A stretch of DNA of 64,000 nucleotides from contig NW_021833036.1 of NCBI RefSeq assembly GCF_006345805.1, positions 1-64,000 on the forward strand. The letters run 5' to 3'. A program made the translations under genes and the position numbers. The notes under the pieces were generated by a model. That model was not told where the DNA came from, did no database searches, and saw only the letters and a program-made list of their open reading frames with translations. Positions 4,722 through 55,818 of this stretch are shown piece by piece; position 1 is the stretch's first letter; each line of letters begins with the position of its first letter. This stretch comes from Octopus sinensis. Its lineage: Eukaryota.

Positions 4722-5100
4722 CACTCCGTCGGTTACGATGACGAGGGTTCCGGTTGATCCGATCAACGGAACAGCCTGCTCGTGAAATTAACGTGTAAGT
4801 GGCTGAGCACTCCACAGACATGTGTACCCTTAACATAGTTCTCGGGGATATTCAGCGTGACACAGAGAGTGACAAGGCCGGCCCTTTGAAATACAGGTAC
4901 AACAGAAACAGGAAGTAAGAGTGAGAGAAAGTTGTGGTGAAAAAGTACAGCAGGGATCACCACCATCCCCTGCCGGAGCCTCGTGGAGCTTTTAGGTGTT
5001 TTCGCTCAATAAACACTCACAATGCCCGGTCTGGGAATCGAAACCGCGATCCTCCGACCACAAGTCTGCTGCCCTAACCACTGGGCCATTGCGCCTCCAC
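4722..5100 (-). mobile_element. SINE family D, full length
   Basis: Reverse complement of the 25742-26127 copy. Confidence 0.85.
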
Positions 5101-37019: not shown

Positions 37020-37233
37020 CTGAAATCAGAAAATAGAAATAAGGACAGAAACAAGATATTTTAGAACTGAAGAAACAAATACCAAACTCTCCATTCCTGT
37101 ATTCCAGAAGGATGTAGAAGGTGGAGGCAGAAGATGATGTATCTCAAAGAGTGAACAACCTGTGTTGCAGTTACAGACATTTAATGACAGAGCGGCTCTT
37201 GGAATGTCTACCAGAATGCAAGACACCACTCAC

Positions 37234-37262
37234 CGGTGTGTGGTTGGGTTGGAGCACAAAAT
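37234..37262 (-). CDS. CCNB1IP1: HEI10/CCNB1IP1 short C-terminal exon (may read through to a stop at 37171)
   Basis: tttctttatag|AT...CCG|gtgagt; 29 nt. (D)FVLQPNHTP resembles recalled human GDFQFRPF. Without splicing the frame runs to TAA at 37173-37171. Confidence 0.65.
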
Positions 37263-39222: not shown

Positions 39223-39291
39223 CATCATCACAGCCGTTATTTGCAAGTGGAGGTGGAGGTGCAGATGGGGTGTGAAGCTTCCGGAGGACAG
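39223..39291 (-). CDS. CCNB1IP1: HEI10/CCNB1IP1 coding exon (Pro-rich tail)
   Basis: attctctag|CT...G|gtaagt; 69 nt, phase 1/1; (A)VLRKLHTPSAPPPPLANNGCDD. Confidence 0.7.
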
Positions 39292-41560: not shown

Positions 41561-41684
41561 CATCAGCAGAAGATAAGGACAAGATGAAGTTCTCATTTTT
41601 AAAACCGTTCCAGACCTTCTCCGGGCATTCCTTTTCGTAATTGATCGGAGAAATCAATTTCCTACGTATGACATCATACATCGA
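41561..41684 (-). CDS. CCNB1IP1: HEI10/CCNB1IP1 coding exon
   Basis: tgtctttcag|TCG...G|gtaaac; 124 nt, phase 0/1. SMYDVIRRK resembles recalled human GLYDSLRLR. Confidence 0.82.
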
Positions 41685-42849: not shown

Positions 42850-43578
42850 GTGTTGTGAGGTGGCAGAATCATTAGGATACCAGGCAAAATGATTAGTGGC
42901 TTTTCTTCTCATTCGTTAGGAGTTCAAATTCTGTCAAGGTCAACTTTTAGGGTGAGTAAAATAAGAACTAACAGAGCTCTGCCATCAATGGGATCGACCA
43001 GCTTCCTCTTCCGAAATTTCAGGCTTTGTGCTTGGATTAGAAAGAGTTATTATCTTAGGGTAGTAAGCTGGAAGAAGTAACCATGTGGTAAGAAGCTCGC
43101 CTCCCAACCACATGGTTCTGGGTTCAATCCACCGTGTGACACCTTGGGCAAGCCTTGAGTGGATTTGGTAGACAGAAACTAAATGAAGCCTATCGTATAT
43201 GTGTGTGTGTCTTTGTGTCTGTATGTCTCCCAACAAACACTTGACAGCCGGTGTTGGTGTGTTTACATCCCATAACCTGGCAGTTCAGTAAAAGAGATTA
43301 ATAAAATAAATACCAGGATCAATTCATTCTTCAAGGTGGTGCCCCAGCATGGCCACGGTCTAATGACTGAAACAAGTAAAAGATAAAAGATGTAGGTTGT
43401 GTGCATCTGGTTTACGTCCCTATAACTTAGCAGTTCGGCAAAGCGGATCAATAGAATAAGTACTAGGCTTTGAAACAAAAAGTACTGAGGTTGATTCTTT
43501 CTACTAAAAATCCTTCAAGGTGGTGCCCCAGAATGGCCACAGCCTAACAAGTGAAAAAGAAATAGAAGATAAAACAAC

Positions 43579-44170
43579 AGGCGCAGGAGTGGCTGTGTGG
43601 TAAGTAGCTTGCTTACCAACCACATGGTTTCGGGTTCAGTCCCACTGCATGGCATCTTGGGCAAGTGTCTTCTGCTATAGCCCCGGGCCAACCAATGCCT
43701 TGTGAGTGGATTTGGTAGACGGAAACTGAAAGAAGCCTGTCGTATATATGTGTGTGTGTGTGCGTGTGTCTGTTTGTCCCCCACTAGTATTTGACAACCC
43801 TGGTTCCAGGTTCAGTCCCACTGCCTGGCACCTTGGGCAAATGTCTTCTACTATAGCCTCAGGCCAACCAATGCCTTGTGAGTGGATTCGGTAGACGGAA
43901 ACTGAAAGAAGCCTGTCGTATATATGTATATATATACATATATGTGTTTGTGTGTGTCTGTGTTTGTCCCCCTAGCATTGCTTGACAACCGATGCTGGTG
44001 TGTTTACGTCCCCCGTCACTTAGCGGTTCGGCAAAAGAGACCGATAGAATAAGTACTGGGCTTACAAAGAATAAGTCCCGGGGTCGATTTGCTCGACTAA
44101 AGGTGGTGCTCCAGCATGGCCGCAGTCAAATGACTGAAGCAAGTAAAAGAGTAAAAGAGTAAAAGAGTAA
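43579..44170 (+). mobile_element. SINE family A (compound), tail abutting a HEI10 donor
   Basis: The (TAAAAGAG)n tail ends at 44170, within the +2/+3 positions of the donor after exon 44172-44263. Confidence 0.85.
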
Positions 44171-44171
44171 C

Positions 44172-44263
44172 CTGTAGCTTCTGGCATTGTCTTGTTTTTT
44201 CCACCAGTTTTTCGGCAACTTCACTATATTTCTTTTTGGTGGTCTCCAGATCCTTCTTGGTGG
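44172..44263 (-). CDS. CCNB1IP1: HEI10/CCNB1IP1 coiled-coil exon
   Basis: gtggtttcag|CC...CAG|gttact; 92 nt, phase 1/0. (A)TKKDLETTKKKYSEVAEKLVEKTRQCQKLQ matches recalled human KKVLEEYKKKFSDISEKLMERNRQYQKLQ. Confidence 0.88.
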
Positions 44264-44347
44264 CTGAAACCACAGAAATTGACCAAAATTATCAGAGATT
44301 CATAACTTTGTGTAGCATAATTTTTGTTCTTGGGTAGCAATTGTTAA

Positions 44348-44568
44348 CCCTTTAGTGTTCACATTATTCTGCCAAAATTAATGCTTCTTCATCTACATTG
44401 TTTTTAATTAATCATGCATTACCTTATAGCATTGAGATTTTGGTGAGGTAGCTGTTAATTATTAAAACGATATCGTAGGGTTGGTGTGAGAGACCAGATC
44501 TGGCCAGTTTGAACATAAAACAAGCAGAATACTTTTAGCTGGATATGGCCGGTTTAAATGCTAAAGGG
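44348..44568. mobile_element. piggyBac-type MITE family B
   Basis: TTAA-CCCTTT...AAAGGG-TTAA. Confidence 0.85.
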
Positions 44569-45227
44569 TTAATTTCTATTTGCCGAACCCTAGAAAGTAT
44601 GAAAAATGGCTAACATTTCCTTCAAACTTTGCTTTTGTTACATTTATTCAAACCCCAAAGAATCCCTCTCAACACATGGCTATAATGCTTCCCCAATACT
44701 CCTGACCATGATCAGAGATGCACATATTGTCAGCCACTAAGGGACAAGTTCAACAGATTGCGGTCAAGTAATTATGTCCTATTACAATGGGTAACACGAT
44801 TTTTGTCCTTGGGTTACAACTGTCATTTCCTATTTCCTGACCCCTAGAAAGTATGAAAAATGGCTTATGCTTCCTTCAAACTTTGCTTTTCTTACATTTA
44901 TTCAAACCCCAAAGAATCCCTCTCAACATATGGCTACGATGCTCCCCACAAGTACTCCTGCTCGTCATCAGAGAAGCAAATATTGTCAGCCACTGAGAGA
45001 CTTGCTCAAGTGATTAAGGTCTGAACAGAGTATTTGCTATAACAATATTTCTGCTTCAGCAACTCAGAGTGCTGAATCTGTGATATGTAATGGGAAAGCA
45101 TTGATGTCCAGGTCAGAAAAGCAAAATGTGAAGGGAATAGCAGTCATTTCCTTTGATTTCTAGAAAGAAGCAAATAGGAAATAACCCCTACTGACCAAAG
45201 GCAAAAAAAAAGATTGAAATTTTGTTA

Positions 45228-45800
45228 AGGCGCAGGAGTGGCTGTGTGGTAAGTAGCTTGCTTACCAACCACATGGTTCCAGGTTCAGTCCCACTGCGTG
45301 GCACCTTGGGCAAGTGTCTTCTACTATAGCCTCAGGCCGACCAAAGCCTTGTGAGTGGATTTGATAGACGGAAACTGAAAAAAGCCTGTCGTATATATGT
45401 ATATATATTTATACAAGTAGCTTGCTAACCAACCACATGGTTCCAGGTTCAGTCCCACTGCGTGGCATCTTGGGCAAGTGCCTTCTGCTATAGCCCCGGG
45501 TCGACCAATGCCTTGTGAGTGGATTTGGTAGACGGAAACTGAAAGAAGCCTGTCATATATATGTATATATATATGTATGTGTGTTTGTTTGTGCGTCTGT
45601 GTTTGTCCCCCTAGCATTGCTTGACAACCGATGCTGGTGTGTTTATGCCCTCATCACTTAGCGGTTCGGCAAAACAGACCGATAGAATAAGTACTGGGCT
45701 TACAAAAGAATAAGTCCCGGGGTCGAGTTGCTTGATTAAAGGCAGTGCTCCAGCATGGCCGCAGTCAAATGACTGAAACAAGTAAAAGAGTAAAAGAGTA
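45228..45800 (+). mobile_element. SINE family A with duplicated head
   Basis: The tail ends 14 nt from the HEI10 micro-exon boundary. Confidence 0.85.
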
Positions 45801-45814
45801 ATATGGCAACTTAC

Positions 45815-45835
45815 CGTTTTGCTGTAGTTTCATAG
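45815..45835 (-). CDS. CCNB1IP1: HEI10/CCNB1IP1 21-nt micro-exon
   Basis: aataaag|CTATGAAACTACAGCAAAACG|gtaagt; phase 1/1. It adds SMKLQQN, filling exactly the 7-residue gap relative to recalled human ELT-SMKGEVT-SMKKVLEEY. Confidence 0.82.
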
Positions 45836-46149
45836 CTTTATTTACTGATAAGGAAAATTACAAGAAAATATTTTAGATTCAATCACAAGAACCATTGTCA
45901 TCACTGTCTTTTTAAGGTCCCCTTTTTAAGGTCCACCCACGCTTACATGGGTTAGATTATTGGGACAGATTTTCTAGTCCCCTATTTCTAAGCAATGAGC
46001 AAAGTAATATTTCCTCGTGGCCGGACATGTTTTGACGGAATACTGGAAATAAACAACACTGCTTGTATGACAGTGACACTCATTTACAACCATCGTATGA
46101 TATCAAGACAAGGGAACACAAACACACACACATGCATGCATGTACGTAC

Positions 46150-46815
46150 AGGCGGCGAGCTGGCAGAAACGTTAGCACGCCGGGCAAAATGCATAGCCAT
46201 ATTTCATCTGCCGTTACGTTCTGAGTTCAAATTCAGCCGAGGTCGACTTTGCCTTTCATCCTTTCAGGGTCAATAAATTAAGTACCTATTTCTTTATTAC
46301 CCACAAGGGGCTAAACATAGAGGGGACAAACAAGGACAGACATAGGTATTAAGTCGATTACATCGACCCCAGTGCGTAACTGGTACTTAATTTATCGACC
46401 CCGAAAGGATGAAAGGCAAAGTCGACCTTGGCAGAATTTGAACTCAGAATGTAACGGCAGACAAAATACCTATTTCTTTACTACCCACAAGGGGCTAAAC
46501 ATAGAGGGGACAAACAAGGACAGACATAAGTATTAAGTCAATTACATCGACCCCAGTGCGTAACTGGTACTTATTTAATCGACCCCGAAAGGATGAAAGG
46601 CAAAGTCGACCTCGGCAGAATTTGAACTCACAACGTAACGCAGACGAAATACTGTTAAGCATTTCGCCCGGCGTGCTAACGTTTCTGCCAGCTCGCCGCC
46701 TTTTTATAAATTAAGTACCAGTTACACACTGGGGTCGATGTAATCGACTTAATCCGTTTGTCTGTCCTTGTTTGTTCCCTCTGTGTTTAGCCCCTTGTGG
46801 GTAGTAAAGAAATAC
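46150..46815. mobile_element. SINE B (+) interrupted by an antisense SINE-B dimer (about 46287-46705) with a 14-bp TSD
   Basis: ATAAATTAAGTACC at 46273-46286 and 46706-46719. Confidence 0.88.
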
Positions 46816-47349
46816 ATCTTTCAGTGTCCCGCTCAAACATTCACCCACATTTGGCTGGTTTTGGGTTTTGTTTAAGGTGCCAACCAGTGGGATTGAACCT
46901 GTAACCATATGGCCGGGAAGAAAAACCTTTCAAGAACATGACCACACCAGCCCCTATGCATTTTGGAGGGATTTTGTTTTGTTTTTAGACTTAACCTCCC
47001 AATTGGCACTAAGCCACCTCCCTCGATACAAATTCATCCTCCAACTCAGTTGAGGGGACTTCATCTTGCAAGTTACTTGGTGACCCCCTGTCAGTCCAAA
47101 TGCCATGAAAAAAAACACCTAGTACACTCAGTAAAGTGACTGGCTTTAGGAAGGGAATCCAGCCATAGAAACCATGCCAAAGAGACAATCTCTTCCCTTC
47201 CCTTCCCTTGTCTATCTTGGGCGTCCTTGTATCTCCCCTACAGCAAGGCACCCATCTTTATCCCCCTATTATTTCTTTCAACCTCTCATCAACTAACACC
47301 CAGCTGAGGGGACTTCAACTTGAAAATTACTTGGTGACCCCTGCTGGTC

Positions 47350-47350
<1 letters not shown>

Positions 47351-47390
<40 letters not shown>

Positions 47391-47587
47391 TATATGTACG
47401 TATGTATGTATGTATGTATGTAAGTATGTATGTATGCATGCATGCATGCATGCATGCATGCATGCATGTATGTATGTATGTATGTATGTGTGTATGTATG
47501 TAAGTATGTATGTATGTATGTATGTATGTATGTATGTATGTATGTATTATGTATGTATGTGTGTGGTATGTATGTGTGTGTGTATGT

Positions 47588-47629
<42 letters not shown>

Positions 47630-47643
47630 GTGTGTGTGTGTGA

Positions 47644-47679
<36 letters not shown>

Positions 47680-47762
47680 GTATGTATGTGTGTATGTGTG
47701 TATGTGTGTATGTATGTGTGTATGTATGTATGTATGTATGTATGTATGTATGTATGTATGTA

Positions 47763-47793
<31 letters not shown>

Positions 47794-47844
47794 ATTATTA
47801 TGTATGTATGTATTGTATGTAGTGGTTGTATGTATGTATGTATG

Positions 47845-47878
<34 letters not shown>

Positions 47879-47930
47879 TGTATGTATGTATGTATGTATG
47901 TATGTGTGTATGTATGTATATGTGTGTGTG
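47351..47930. repeat. Compound microsatellite (TA)n/(TATG)n/(TG)n/(CATG)n
   Basis: Directly visible; it generates spurious ORFs. Confidence 0.95.
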
Positions 47931-48135
47931 TCCATATTTGCCCACCACTTGTCAACTGGTGTTGATGCGTTTATGCCCTTGTAACTTAGCAGTTCAGCAA
48001 GAGAAACCGAATAAGTACCAGGCTTTAAAAACAACTCATGTGGTCAACTCATTCAACTAAAAATTCTTCAAAGCATTGCCCCAGCATGGCCACAGTCTAA
48101 TGACTGAAACAAGTCAAAGACAAACTATAAAACTA

Positions 48136-48648
48136 CTAGCAGTATCGCCCGGCGTTGCTCGGGTTTGTAAGGGAAATAACTATATAACCATTTTTAGAGA
48201 GTTACTTCCCTTATAGATTCCAATTCGGGCTTTCTTAGCCATTTCTGTTTTGGTGTCTTCAAGCCATGAAGTCGTTGTTCTAAAAGAACGCTGGTCTCCT
48301 TGACAACGCTTTACGACGATGATTTCCTTACACTCCCTTCCCCACAGCTTCACGAGGGAGGGAAGAAGGGGGAGAAGCAAACAGGTGCAGGTGTGACCAT
48401 GGACGCCAACTCCGCCGCCATCGACAGACGAAAAAATATGCATTAAAATGGAATAAAAAATGATGTTAAATTATTTTTAAAATCGTAGACTTATCGTAGA
48501 CGCGCGCTAATACCCTGAAGGGCTCGATATGAATCACGACTATAAGATACCCGAATTTGGTTAAACTGCACCGCAAAATGTGGGAGTAGTTAGGAACCTA
48601 AATCGAAGGGAACAGACACTCACACAACTACAGTTTTATATATATAGA
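48136..48648 (-). mobile_element. Non-autonomous Helitron, complete (513 bp)
   Basis: A|TCTATATATA...cccgagcaacgccggg hairpin, 8 nt, CTAG|T; no TSD. Confidence 0.88.
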
Positions 48649-48658
48649 TAAAGGATAC

Positions 48659-48773
48659 AACTCAATTCAGACTGAATCCTGGACACGACTTCTTCGTAGT
48701 ATTGTTCAAGTTGAGTGGCCTTTTCCTTAACTTTGCTGGCAATATATTCCTGGTAGACTCTCTCTTGGTGAGA
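48659..48773 (-). CDS. CCNB1IP1: HEI10/CCNB1IP1 coding exon
   Basis: cttgttgcag|TCT...T|gtatccttt; 115 nt, phase 0/1. SHQERVYQEYIASKVKEKATQLEQYYEEVVSRIQSELS matches recalled human VHQERLYQEY...QMEKIY. Confidence 0.92.
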
Positions 48774-48821
48774 CTGCAACAAGAACAACAGAAAGGGAAT
48801 GAAAAAAATCACTACATACAT

Positions 48822-49180
48822 AGGCGCAGGAGTGACTGTGTGGTAAGTAGCTTGCTAACCAACCACATGGTTCCGGGTTCAGTCCCACTGCATGGCATCT
48901 TGGGCAAGTGTCTTCTGCTATATATATGTATATATATATATGTGTGTGTGTGTGTATGTGTGTGTGTTTGTGTGTCTGTGTTTGTCCCCCTAGCATTGCT
49001 TGACAACCGATGCTGGTGTGTTTACATCCCCCGTCACTTAGCGGTTCGGCAAAGGAGACCGATAGAATAAGTACTGGGCTTACAAAGAATAAGTCCCGGG
49101 GTCGATTTGCTCGACTAAAAGGGCGGTGCTCCAGCATGGCCGCAGTCAAATGACTGAAACAAGTAAAAGAGTAAAAGAGT
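48822..49180 (+). mobile_element. SINE family A
   Basis: Head and tail intact, with an internal deletion. Confidence 0.85.
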
Positions 49181-49369
49181 ATACATCAGGGGAGGGGGGG
49201 TGACAATTACAGGGTATAACAAAATTTTTAGTTCTTTTGGTTTTTTTGGGGAGTTTTTTTTGTTCATTTTGTTTGTTGTCTTTGGTCAGCGAGTGTTGTT
49301 TCCTAGTTGCTTTCTATCTAGAAGAGATGGCAGTTATGGAGCCATTGCAGACTTCCAATCTAATGGACA

Positions 49370-49600
49370 TATATATATATATACACACAGACACACATAT
49401 ATACGCATATACATACACACACACATATATATATATATATATCCACACACACATATACATATATATATATACACATATATATAGATACACACACACATAT
49501 ATATATATACACATATATATATATATATACAAACACACACACATATATATATATATATACAAACACACACACACACACATATATATATAAATACAAACAC

Positions 49601-49650
<50 letters not shown>

Positions 49651-49662
49651 CACACACACATA
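49370..49662. repeat. Compound (TA)n/(CA)n microsatellite
   Basis: Directly visible. Confidence 0.95.
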
Positions 49663-49945
49663 TATGGCCCAGTGGTTACAACAGCGAAATCGCGGTTTCA
49701 ATTCCCAGACCGGGCGTTGTGAGTGTTTATTGAGCGAAAACACCTAAAAGCTTCACGTGGCTCTGGCAGGGGGTGGTGGTGATCCCTACTGTACTCTTTC
49801 GCCACAACTTTCTCTCACTCTTTCTTCTGTTGGCCTGCTCGCTTAGCCAGCGGGGTGGCGTCGTTTGAAGGCTAAAAAAACAATGCGAAGCGCATTGTGA
49901 CCAGCGATGTGTAACAACATCTGATAGCCTAGTCAGTCACGATGA
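49663..49945 (+). mobile_element. SINE family D head with a third type of tail
   Basis: Identity to family D stops after ttctctcactctt; then tggcctgctcgcttagccagcgggg... Confidence 0.65.
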
Positions 49946-49999
49946 TCACAGTGATATATATATATACACACACACACCAAATCTACTCGCAAGGCTGTG

Positions 50000-50655
50000 G
50001 GTCAGCCAGGGGCAATAGCTGAAGCCACTTGTCCAAGATGCCATAATGTTCATCCTTCGGGTTCGAAGATGACCATTGACATCATTTGGTGGAATTGCTG
50101 CTATGAGACCGGAGGTGGCTGGTGAGGCCAATCCGGGCAAGAAAGCCCCTCCCACAGGTGGGGCAGAAGTGGGTAGGGGCCGTGCTACTGGTGCAGGTGG
50201 CTCTGGCTTTCCGCATCTGGCGTTTCTGTTCTGCTGACTGAATCCGTCTCTCCTCGGCTGTCTTTGCTCCTGTGGTGATTGCGCTGCGCCAGGATGAACG
50301 GTCGGCAGCAAGTGTCTCCCAAGTCTCTGTGCCGATGGAGAAGTCTTTGAGAGAGACTTTGAGACTGTCCTTGAAGCGCTTCTTCTGCCCTCCGACATTG
50401 CGTTTGCCCTGGCTGAGTTCACCGTAGAAGAGCTGTTTTGGGATGCGAGTGTCAGACATGTGGGAGACGTGGCCTGCCCATCTCAGCTGGGCCTTGCGCA
50501 TGATCGTGATGGTGCTAGGGAGATCTGCCTGCTTCAGAACCTCCATGTCTGGGACTTTGTCCTGCCAGCGGATGTGAAGGAGGTTCCGAAGACACCTGAG
50601 GTGGAAGTGGTTTATCTGGCGCTCGTGCCTTCGGTAAGCAGTCCACGAGCGCCAG
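50000..50655 (-). mobile_element. RTE (BovB-like) LINE C-terminus with C2H2 finger
   Basis: FHLRCLRNLLHIRWQDKVP...LRWAGHV..MSDTRIPKQLFYGEL...CPTCGRGFLARIGLTSHLRSH. Confidence 0.9.
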
Positions 50656-52812: not shown

Positions 52813-52887
52813 CTGGTATGTCCAAAAGGAAAGGGCCCTTGAACATATTTCCATGATAACTTCTGGTTTTTGACCAGCAAGGACCAT
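52813..52887 (-). CDS. CCNB1IP1: HEI10/CCNB1IP1 coding exon
   Basis: ttttatttag|ATG...CAG|gtaagt; 75 nt, phase 0/0. MVLAGQKPEVIMEICSRALSFWTYQ matches recalled human MVLAGLRPEIVLDISSRALAFWTYQ. Confidence 0.92.
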
Positions 52888-55747: not shown

Positions 55748-55818
55748 AGACTTATATTGGTCTGAAGGTTGAAGGTCAATTCTAATAATATCAAAAGTTC
55801 CAGAAAGACTGCTTTCAC
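55748..55818 (-). CDS. CCNB1IP1: HEI10/CCNB1IP1 coding exon (first in window)
   Basis: taaaag|GT...TCT|gtaagt; 71 nt, phase 1/0. (C)ESSLSGTFDIIRIDLQPSDQYKS matches recalled human CNSTLSGKLDIVRTELSPSEEYKA. Confidence 0.88.

What the first reader, a model, noticed from the sequence alone, without database searches (positions are those of the whole stretch)
45815..48659. U12-type intron locked to a 21-nt micro-exon in the crossover gene HEI10
Seen: a perfect U12 donor GTATCCTTT, a near-consensus branch TTTTCCTTATC about 13 nt from the AG, no pyrimidine tract, then a 21-nt exon with an ordinary GTAAGT donor. Established: U12 donors are not normally joined to U2 acceptors, minor introns are slowly spliced and can limit expression, and HEI10 dosage controls crossover number in Arabidopsis. 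Inference: the in-frame micro-exon cannot simply be skipped, and minor-spliceosome activity may set HEI10 dose in meiosis. Automated annotation is likely to miss this exon. I do not know whether this intron has been reported in other taxa.
Basis: partly seen in the sequence, partly recalled or inferred. Interest (0 to 1): 0.7.

Follow-up and report, generated by a model that had tools for sequence, protein, structure and literature searches.

The report
Ancient U12 intron beside HEI10 micro-exon
The octopus meiotic crossover gene HEI10 (CCNB1IP1) really does carry a rare minor-spliceosome (U12-type) intron directly upstream of a 21-base exon; the layout is inherited from early animals and already sits in the RefSeq gene model, and nothing yet shows that it regulates HEI10 dose.

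Summary
A 115-nt exon ends at 48659. The U12 donor GTATCCTTT lies at 48658-48650 and the branch motif TTTTCCTTATC at 45857-45847. The branch A is 13 nt from the AG, with no pyrimidine tract. The 21-nt exon is 45835-45815, followed by a GTAAGT donor.

The window's exons encode residues 48-265 of Octopus sinensis RefSeq CCNB1IP1 exactly, micro-exon included.

The same layout (115-nt exon, phase-1 GTATCC intron, 21-nt exon, U2 intron) is found in O. bimaculoides, sea urchin, amphioxus and Nematostella. A sponge keeps the 21-nt exon but has a U2-type upstream intron. Mouse and lamprey have no introns there.

None of 108 animal protein models lacks the 7 residues. Three GenBank gene models break off by reading through this donor, so some pipelines do fail here.

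A second U12 intron follows a 16-nt exon in the RING region, outside the window. A plant HEI10 also has U12-type introns, at other positions.

Verdict: a genuine, ancient, constitutive minor intron, and a new member of a known kind. The "cannot be skipped" argument is plausible. The dose-control idea is untested, and the sponge conversion and vertebrate loss weaken it.

The parts
48659..48773 (-). 115-nt coding exon of CCNB1IP1/HEI10 (SHQERVYQEY...SRIQSELS plus the first base of the next codon). It ends in phase 1.
   Evidence: Exact mapping of O. sinensis XP_036355255.1. The same 115-nt exon occurs in six other animal gene models.
48650..48658 (-). U12-type 5' splice site GTATCCTTT
   Evidence: Sequence. 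It is the only copy in the window. It matches the U1 consensus at 3 of 9 positions. It is conserved to +9 in O. bimaculoides, after which the alignment breaks down. GTATCC is at the same codon position in urchin, Nematostella, two amphioxus species, a sea cucumber and a bivalve.
45836..48658 (-). U12-type (GT-AG subclass) intron, 2,823 nt, phase 1. It is mostly repeats: a (CATA)n/(CA)n tract at about 47350-47950 and SINE-like copies.
45847..45857 (-). Branch-site motif TTTTCCTTATC (core TCCTTATC at 45854-45847). The candidate branch A is at 45849, 13 nt from the 3' end of the intron.
   Evidence: Sequence. The stretch from upstream of the motif to the AG is 100% identical in O. bimaculoides, while the 21-nt exon itself has 3 substitutions. 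TTCCTTCAT, TTCCTTCAC and CCCTTAAC lie 12-15 nt from the AG in urchin, Nematostella and amphioxus.
45836..45837 (-). 3' splice site AG that is used. An upstream AG at 45846-45845 lies only 3-4 nt from the branch A and is not used in the RefSeq model.
45815..45835 (-). Constitutive 21-nt micro-exon CTATGAAACTACAGCAAAACG. It encodes (S)MKLQQN, with split codons at both ends.
   Evidence: Exact mapping of the RefSeq protein. A 21-nt exon is present at this place in O. bimaculoides, urchin, Nematostella, amphioxus and the sponge Ephydatia. Cephalopod transcript contigs of 964-1014 nt carry the uninterrupted ORF with SLKLQHT.
44264..45814 (-). U2-type intron, 1,551 nt, with donor ACG|GTAAGT (+1 to +6 perfect for U1) and acceptor ...tttctgtggtttcag
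44172..44263 (-). 92-nt coding exon (ATKKDLETTKKKYSEVAEKLVEKTRQCQKLQ)
   Evidence: A 92-nt exon is conserved in urchin, amphioxus, O. bimaculoides and the sponge.
55748..55818 (-). 71-nt coding exon ((C)ESSLSGTFDIIRIDLQPSDQYKS). It is the first exon of the gene that lies inside the window.
52813..52887 (-). 75-nt coding exon (MVLAGQKPEVIMEICSRALSFWTYQ)
41561..41684 (-). 124-nt coding exon (SMYDVIRRKLISPINYEKECPEKVWNGFKNENFILSLSSAD...)
39223..39291 (-). 69-nt coding exon (AVLRKLHTPSAPPPPLANNGCDD)
37171..37262 (-). Last coding exon (89 nt) plus the TAA stop codon

Best explanation
This is a genuine, constitutively spliced U12-type (minor-spliceosome, GT-AG subclass) intron in the coiled-coil region of Octopus sinensis CCNB1IP1/HEI10. 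It is followed by a constitutive 21-nt exon and an ordinary U2-type intron.

Proposed mechanism (inferred from what is established about U12 splicing, not tested here):
- U11 pairs with GTATCCTTT.
- U12 pairs with TTCCTTATC and bulges the A at 45849.
- The AG 13 nt downstream is used without a pyrimidine tract.
- The strong U1 site GTAAGT, 21 nt further on, probably assists by cross-exon contact.
- U12 and U2 sites do not pair, so the only productive route includes the micro-exon.

Shown here: the layout 115-nt exon | phase-1 U12 intron | 21-nt exon | U2 intron | 92-nt exon was inherited from at least the cnidarian-bilaterian ancestor. The exon pattern itself goes back to the sponge-eumetazoan ancestor. 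Later the intron was converted to U2-type in a sponge and deleted, together with its neighbour, in vertebrates.

The tie between the U12 intron and the micro-exon is therefore best read as an old, stably inherited gene structure. There is no present evidence for a dose-regulating role.
For: - Signals and coordinates.
- Exact agreement with RefSeq XP_036355255.1: (name).
- Orthologous GTATCC donors in phase 1 at the same codon, each with a TCCTT-type motif 12-15 nt from the AG and a 21-nt exon, in O. bimaculoides, S. purpuratus, N. vectensis and B. lanceolatum.
- The same donor in B. belcheri, H. leucospilota and S. velum.
- Between the two octopuses, conservation stops right after donor position +9. 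It is complete across the branch motif to the AG, although the exon itself differs at 3 of 21 bases.
- Across 55 mapped introns, GTATCC donors go together with a branch-type motif (6 of 10 against 1 of 45; Fisher p = 5e-5; the samples are related, so this is indicative only).
- The 7-residue segment has a fixed length in 104 of 108 animal homologues, and none lacks it.
- O. sinensis is among the species with minor introns, and molluscs are relatively rich in them: PMC10639083.
- Exon-definition crosstalk between the two spliceosomes is reviewed in PMC8329584.
Against: - No intronIC score, no RNA-seq junction counts and no snRNA dependence test could be obtained here.
- The branch motif departs from consensus at the usual branch position (TCCTTATC against TCCTTAAC).
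- Transcript evidence for this species is only the RefSeq model. The direct transcript contigs come from another cephalopod.
- The sponge shows that the micro-exon can be spliced with a U2-type upstream intron. So the U12 type is not mechanistically required, at least where introns are short (76 and 43 nt).
Confidence: 0.88

Rival explanations
1. One reading: the U12 intron is kept because slow minor splicing limits HEI10 mRNA output and so tunes crossover number, and the U12/U2 incompatibility locks the micro-exon in.
For: - HEI10 is dosage-sensitive for crossovers in Arabidopsis (PMC5358726, PMC8333306, PMC9556546).
- Animal HEI10 carries two U12 introns where the intron-rich structure survives. 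A plant HEI10 (Cochlearia) has a perfect U12 intron (GTATCCTTT ... TTTCCTTAAAT) and a second U12-like one.
- No annotated isoform skips the micro-exon.
Against: - There are no expression or retention data.
- Mouse and lamprey lost both introns, and a sponge converted this one to U2-type.
- The pan-eukaryotic survey concludes that most minor-intron evolution fits neutral processes (PMC10639083).
- The plant U12 introns are at different positions, so there is no conserved 'regulatory intron' shared by the kingdoms.
Confidence: 0.1
2. Mechanistic-necessity reading: in genomes with long introns, a 21-nt exon is too small for ordinary exon definition. The high-information U12 branch site and donor are retained because they let the tiny exon be found.
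For: - Every long-intron lineage examined that still has the micro-exon keeps the U12 type (octopus 2.0-2.8 kb, amphioxus 19 kb, urchin 0.56 kb, Nematostella 0.31 kb). The only U2 convert has 76- and 43-nt introns.
- The downstream donors are near-perfect U1 sites (7-9 matches of 9).
- The other animal U12 intron abuts a 16-nt exon, and the plant one abuts a 31-nt exon.
Against: - The sample is small: one converted lineage.
- Many U2-flanked micro-exons exist in animals.
- No experiment has been done.
- The searchable literature reports no general association of U12 introns with micro-exons.
Confidence: 0.25
3. It is a U2-type intron whose donor merely resembles the U12 consensus.
For: - GTATCCTTT alone is expected about 0.5 times per window.
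- The branch motif has one mismatch at the usual branch position.
Against: - The donor matches U1 at only 3 of 9 positions and lacks -1G and +5G.
- There is no pyrimidine tract.
- GTATCC has been kept at this codon across phyla whose introns are otherwise unalignable.
- Where the intron did become U2-type (the sponge), the donor changed to GTAAGA.
Confidence: 0.03

Closest known systems
U12-type (minor) introns of the GT-AG subclass, as catalogued by intronIC and the pan-eukaryotic survey (PMC10639083)
   Same: - /GTATCCTTT donor.
- TCCTT-type branch motif 13 nt from the AG.
- No pyrimidine tract.
- Non-zero phase.
- Positional conservation among animals.
- Loss by deletion or by conversion to U2-type in some lineages.
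   Different: - The host gene is not a vertebrate minor-intron gene, because vertebrates deleted the intron.
- The 3' exon is only 21 nt.
- The branch motif has T where the consensus has the second A.
MAPK8/9 exon 6a/6b and TMEM87A/B exon 11/11a, where U12/U2 splice-site incompatibility constrains which exons can be joined (reviewed in PMC8329584)
   Same: The rule that a U12 donor cannot pair with a U2 acceptor dictates the allowed exon joins.
   Different: In those genes the rule yields mutually exclusive alternative exons. Here there is a single exon, and the predicted outcome is obligatory inclusion. No alternative isoforms are seen.
Cross-exon stimulation of an upstream AT-AC intron by a downstream U1 site (Wu and Krainer 1996, sodium-channel SCN4A; cited from my own knowledge)
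   Same: A U12-type 3' splice site and a U2-type 5' splice site face each other across one exon. The downstream donor is a strong U1 site.
   Different: The exon here is 21 nt, far below usual exon-definition sizes. No experiment has been done.
U11 snRNP-binding splicing enhancer (USSE) of SNRNP48 and RNPC3 (PMC8329584)
   Same: A U12-type 5' splice site lies a short distance downstream of a U2-type 3' splice site. This is the geometry of the 16-nt RING exon in octopus and sponge. The tandem U12 donors in the amphioxus intron recall it as well.
   Different: In HEI10 the U12 donor is a real splice donor. There is no evidence of autoregulation or of a non-productive isoform.
Neuronal SRRM4-dependent micro-exons (3-27 nt)
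   Same: Size, in-frame insertion, and deep conservation.
   Different: - The exon is constitutive.
- The gene is a meiotic one.
- The upstream intron is U12-type.
- There is no TGC motif between the branch site and the AG.

Membership tests
U12-type intron (GT-AG subclass) | 5' splice site /RTATCCTTT directly at the exon boundary | tested here: met
   GTATCCTTT at 48658-48650, 9 of 9. The boundary is fixed by exact protein mapping.
U12-type intron (GT-AG subclass) | Branch-site motif TCCTTRAY about 10-20 nt from the 3' splice site | tested here: met
   TCCTTATC at 45854-45847, 7 of 8. The mismatch is at the second A of the consensus. The A at 45849 is 13 nt from the intron end. The motif is identical in O. 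bimaculoides.
U12-type intron (GT-AG subclass) | No polypyrimidine tract between branch site and AG | tested here: met
   The intervening bases are AGTAAATAA, with 1 pyrimidine in 9.
U12-type intron (GT-AG subclass) | Poor fit to the U1 / U2-type donor consensus | tested here: met
   3 of 9 matches to CAG|GTRAGT, against 6-9 for most of the U2-type donors of the same genes.
U12-type intron (GT-AG subclass) | U12-type intron at the orthologous position in other lineages | tested here: met
   Phase-1 GTATCC donors at the same codon in seven other animal genomes. Four of them have a mapped branch motif and 21-nt exon.
U12-type intron (GT-AG subclass) | The host organism has a working minor spliceosome | not tested
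   Nothing in the window bears on it; there are no Rfam hits. The literature lists O. sinensis among species with minor introns and molluscs as relatively enriched (PMC10639083).
U12-type intron (GT-AG subclass) | Formal classifier score (intronIC) and dependence on U11/U12/U6atac | not testable with these tools
   intronIC and its training matrices are not available here, and no wet test is possible.
Micro-exon (30 nt or less) | An internal exon of 30 nt or less that is present in mature mRNA | tested here: met
   The exon is 21 nt. It is included in the RefSeq or GenBank proteins of three octopus species. It is also included in cephalopod transcript contigs too short to hold introns.
SRRM4-type regulated neuronal micro-exon | UGC-containing enhancer just upstream of the 3' splice site, and alternative inclusion | tested here: not met
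   There is no TGC in the last 40 nt of the intron. No homologue lacks the segment.
CCNB1IP1/HEI10 E3 ligase | N-terminal RING (PF14634), then the conserved MVLAG...FWTYQ block and a coiled coil ending in RQxQKL | tested here: met
   The window encodes residues 48-265 of O. sinensis CCNB1IP1 exactly. It is 52-73% identical to named CCNB1IP1 proteins of many animal phyla. The RING exons themselves lie outside the window.

The most novel reading that the evidence does not exclude
HEI10 may be an ancient gene with two minor introns, each held next to a very small exon (16 nt and 21 nt in animals; 31 nt in a plant). On this reading the pairing is functional. Either the U12 signals are what make these tiny exons recognisable in long-intron genomes, or slow minor splicing gates the dose of a crossover-limiting protein. 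The minor spliceosome would then be a previously unrecognised input to crossover number outside vertebrates.
Probability: 0.12. Interest if true: 0.7.

Novelty: new member of a known kind. Interest (0 to 1): 0.4.

Why it matters
As it stands, this is a clean textbook case of a minor intron, with three useful side results.

1. It documents that the 115 | 21 | 92-nt exon pattern of HEI10 dates to the base of animals. Its fate in different lineages shows all three known outcomes for a minor intron: retention, conversion to U2-type, and deletion.
2. It shows concretely how gene predictors fail at U12 donors. Three GenBank models are truncated with the tell-tale '...SCIL' read-through, and the Nematostella model starts directly after the other U12 intron.
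3. It points to a testable idea in a tractable system. Plant HEI10 is dosage-limiting for crossovers, and the one plant orthologue examined has U12-type introns. Arabidopsis minor-spliceosome mutants could be checked for HEI10 mRNA level and crossover number.

None of this bears on mammalian HEI10, which has lost these introns.

Tried and rejected
- **RING exons in the window.** A regex for C.H.[FLIVMY]C, tblastn with octopus proteins and blastn with O. bimaculoides exons plus flanks all found nothing. Those exons, and the second U12 intron, lie beyond coordinate 64000.
- **Micro-exon in three truncated loci.** I scanned the 10-kb downstream flanks of B. belcheri (L001), Solemya (L002) and Holothuria (L005) for AG + 21 nt + GT with an upstream CCTT. 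There was no convincing candidate. The introns are probably longer than the flank; the intron is 19 kb in B. lanceolatum.
- **Arabidopsis genomic locus.** The look-up for the Arabidopsis HEI10 isoform returned a spliced transcript contig, not genomic DNA. I used Cochlearia instead.
- **Hosted RNA genes.** Rfam at gathering threshold over the whole window, and ARAGORN over 43000-50000, found nothing, so there is no hosted snoRNA or tRNA.
- **Literature.** Searches for CCNB1IP1, HEI10 or At1g53490 together with U12, minor intron or minor spliceosome gave no relevant paper. Searches for micro-exon plus U12 or minor spliceosome gave no paper describing such a pairing.
- **Branch-motif regex.** The simple regex was too strict. 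It missed clear cases such as Cochlearia TTTCCTTAAAT, so the Fisher test there is conservative and is used only as an indication.
- **Upstream AG.** I considered the AG at 45846-45845 as the acceptor. It would add 9 in-frame bases, but it is only 3-4 nt from the branch A and disagrees with the RefSeq protein, so I rejected it.
- **Probe sequences from memory.** They served only as search bait, and no conclusion rests on them.
Full report
**1. What is in the window**

The gene lies on the minus strand. Reading the reverse complement of 44000-49200 gives the following.
- An exon ends ...GAATTGAGTT at 48659.
- The intron begins GTATCCTTTATC at 48658.
- Near its 3' end the intron reads ...cttgtaaTTTTCCTTATCagtaaataaAG, with the AG at 45837-45836.
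- The exon CTATGAAACTACAGCAAAACG runs 45835-45815 and is 21 nt.
- The next intron begins GTAAGT at 45814, and its acceptor is ...tttctgtggtttcag|CCACC at 44264/44263.

Joining the three exons gives one open frame, SHQERVYQEY...SRIQSELS-SMKLQQN-ATKKDLETTKKKYSEVAEKLVEKTRQCQKLQ. Leaving the 21-nt exon out also stays in frame.

**2. Identity of the gene and of the organism**

A rough probe located further exons. Profile searches returned about 1,000 CCNB1IP1/HEI10 homologues.

The cluster holding the O. bimaculoides protein also holds O. vulgaris and O. sinensis entries. An exact spliced mapping shows that eight window exons encode residues 48-265 of O. sinensis XP_036355255.1 without a mismatch, followed by TAA. 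The exons are:
- 55818-55748
- 52887-52813
- 48773-48659
- 45835-45815
- 44263-44172
- 41684-41561
- 39291-39223
- 37262-37174

The window is therefore O. sinensis or something indistinguishable from it, and the micro-exon is already in the RefSeq model. The RING exons are not in the window.

**3. Is it more than chance?**

GTATCCTTT occurs once in the window on both strands, against 0.46 expected. The 9-mer alone proves nothing, and RTATCCTT is not enriched either. The weight comes from context.
- The motif sits exactly on the phase-1 boundary that the protein demands.
- The donor matches the U1 consensus at only 3 of 9 positions, against 6-9 for most U2-type donors of these genes.
- A TCCTT-type motif lies 13 nt from the AG, with no pyrimidine tract.
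- Between O. sinensis and O. bimaculoides, similarity ends directly after donor position +9.
- At the 3' end, CTTGTAATTTTCCTTATCAGTAAATAAAG is 100% identical, while the 21-nt exon itself carries three substitutions.

One caveat: the branch core TCCTTATC has T where the consensus TCCTTAAC has its second A.

**4. Comparative evidence**

I fetched genomic loci for homologues and mapped each protein exactly onto its DNA.

Layout of the orthologous region:

| Species (locus) | Donor | 3' end of intron | Exon | Next donor | Intron length |
|---|---|---|---|---|---|
| O. sinensis (window) | GTT\|GTATCCTTT | TTTTCCTTATCAGTAAATAAAG | 21 nt | GTAAGT | 2,823 nt |
| O. bimaculoides (L006) | GTT\|GTATCCTTT | same 3' end | 21 nt | GTAAGT | 1,998 nt |
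| S. purpuratus (L003) | CTA\|GTATCCTTC | TTTTCCTTCATTGATATTATGTCAG | 21 nt | GTAAGT | 555 nt |
| N. vectensis (L004) | CGT\|GTATCCTTG | TTTTCCTTCACGGTGACACAAG | 21 nt | GTTGGT | 311 nt |
| B. lanceolatum (L008) | GCT\|GTATCCTTC | GCCCTTAACAGTGTGCATCTCAG | 21 nt | GTGAGT | 19,217 nt |

All five introns are in phase 1 in the same codon. The upstream exon is 115 nt. The downstream exon is 92 nt, or 113 nt in the partial Nematostella model.

Three further genomes show the same donor at the same codon:
- B. belcheri: GTATCCTTT
- H. leucospilota: GTATCCTTA
- S. velum: GTATCCATT

Their deposited gene models stop there, having translated T|GTATCCTT as '...SCIL' or '...SCIH'.

The sponge Ephydatia muelleri keeps the pattern 115 | 21 | 92. 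Its upstream intron is 76 nt long, with donor GTAAGA, which is U2-type. A possible relic, TCTTTAAC, lies upstream of its AG.

Mouse and lamprey have only three coding exons. The 7 residues (SMKGEVI in mouse) sit inside one large exon.

The simplest history is this. The exon pattern was present in the ancestor of sponges and eumetazoans. The U12 type was present at least in the cnidarian-bilaterian ancestor. It was later converted in the sponge lineage and deleted in vertebrates. These are the two loss routes described for minor introns (PMC10639083).

**5. Is the micro-exon ever skipped?**

I measured the distance from the FWTYQ block to the RQxQKL block in 108 animal homologues, including many 'isoform X' models.
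- It is 74 residues in 104 of them.
- It is 73 in two, because of a one-residue deletion elsewhere.
- It is longer in two, which are intron read-through artefacts.
- It is never 67, the value expected if the micro-exon were skipped.

Cephalopod transcript contigs of 964-1014 nt carry the uninterrupted 263-residue ORF including SLKLQHT. This fits obligatory inclusion, but protein models are weak evidence about minor isoforms.

**6. How it most likely works**

The signals, their conservation and the splice pattern of the accepted model are shown here. The rest is inferred from what is established about minor splicing (reviewed in PMC8329584, and from my own knowledge).
- The U11/U12 di-snRNP recognises donor and branch site together.
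- The AG 13 nt from the branch A is chosen without U2AF65 or a pyrimidine tract.
- The consensus U1 site 21 nt downstream can help across the exon.
- A U12 donor does not pair with a U2-type branch site and acceptor. The acceptor at 44264 has no TCCTT motif, so exon skipping is disfavoured.

**7. The dose hypothesis**

HEI10 dosage does control crossover number in Arabidopsis (PMC5358726, PMC8333306, PMC9556546).

In the one plant locus examined (Cochlearia, L012), two introns look U12-type:
- Intron 4 is a textbook U12 intron: TAC|GTATCCTTT ... TTTCCTTAAATGAATCTAG, phase 1, after a 31-nt exon.
- Intron 1 is U12-like: GTATCCAA ... CCTTCAC.

Neither is at the position of an animal U12 intron.

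No searchable paper links HEI10 or CCNB1IP1 with minor splicing. The hypothesis is therefore open and testable. Nothing here supports it, and the vertebrate deletion and sponge conversion show that HEI10 functions without the U12 intron.

**8. A second U12 intron**

O. bimaculoides, the sponge and the sea urchin have another GTATCC intron. It lies in phase 1 in the His codon of the RING motif CSH|IFC.
- O. bimaculoides: GTATCCTTTATC ... TTCCTGAAC
- E. muelleri: GTATCCTA ... TTACTTAAC
- S. purpuratus: GTATCCTTT

In octopus and sponge it follows a 16-nt exon. In animals with the intron-rich structure, then, HEI10 has two minor introns, each touching a micro-exon. That is unusual enough to justify a genome-wide test. 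I found no literature on such an association.

**9. Verdict**

- Observation: confirmed.
- Interpretation: partly supported.
- Kind: a new (unreported, though annotated) member of a known class.
- Interest: moderate. It rests on the deep conservation, the micro-exon adjacency seen twice in one gene, and a testable link to crossover control in plants.

Noticed in passing
L006 3067-3082 and following intron (O. bimaculoides); L009 614-629 (Ephydatia); L003 intron 1 (S. purpuratus). Outside the window, beyond coordinate 64000.: There is a second U12-type intron in HEI10. Its donors are GTATCCTTT, GTATCCTA and GTATCCTTT, in phase 1 in the His codon of the RING motif CSH|IFC. In octopus and sponge it directly follows a 16-nt micro-exon. 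The partial Nematostella gene model begins exactly after this intron.
   Followed up: partly
L012 (Cochlearia groenlandica HEI10): intron 4 at 1005-1180 and intron 1 at 571-673: Plant HEI10 has a textbook U12 intron (TAC|GTATCCTTT ... TTTCCTTAAATGAATCTAG, phase 1) right after a 31-nt exon. It also has a second U12-like intron (GTATCCAA ... CCTTCAC), lying 3 codons away from the animal RING U12 position. Arabidopsis genomic DNA could not be fetched to confirm this.
   Followed up: partly
L008 2851-4634 (Branchiostoma lanceolatum), plus copies near 4929 and 5224: Inside the 19-kb U12 intron there is a 90-bp minisatellite of about 20 copies (95% matches). It duplicates the last ~40 nt of the 115-nt exon together with the U12 donor. 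This gives 22 copies of GTATCCTT where about 1 is expected. Whether these decoy U12 donors bind U11 or are ever used is unknown.
   Followed up: partly
L001 (B. belcheri), L002 (Solemya velum), L005 (Holothuria leucospilota): Three deposited gene models end by translating through the U12 donor ('...ELSCIL', '...ELSCIHLHII', '...EVSCILNLEL...'). A C-terminal 'SCIL'/'CIL' read-through is a handy signature of a missed U12 intron in this family.
   Followed up: yes
L009 1285-1360 (Ephydatia muelleri): The sponge intron upstream of the 21-nt exon is U2-type (GTAAGA, 76 nt). It still has TCTTTAAC about 17 nt from the AG, which may be a relic of a U12 branch site after minor-to-major conversion.
   Followed up: no
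window 44171-43950 (minus strand), and L006 18636 onwards: A SINE-like repeat (ctcttttacttg.ttcagtcatttgactgcggccatgctggagcac...) starts within a few bases of the weak donor CAG|GTTACT of the 92-nt exon. A related copy is at the same place in O. bimaculoides. Another copy starts about 14 nt after the micro-exon's GTAAGT donor (about 45800) in O. sinensis only. Dozens of copies of this family are scattered through the window.
   Followed up: partly
window 47350-47950: A roughly 600-nt compound microsatellite, (CATA)n / (CA)n / (CATG)n / (TA)n, lies inside the U12 intron.
   Followed up: no
window 45845-45846: A second AG lies 9 nt upstream of the acceptor that is used. It would be in frame and would add 3 codons, but it is only 3-4 nt from the branch A. 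It could serve as a cryptic acceptor if the branch point shifted.
   Followed up: partly
P0109 (O. bimaculoides XP_014769952.1) and P0248 (O. vulgaris CAI9742208.1): Both models have aberrant N-termini that lack the first RING exon, unlike the O. sinensis model, which starts MDGDLVCNFKKCRK. The region around the 16-nt exon and the other U12 intron is evidently hard for predictors too.
   Followed up: no
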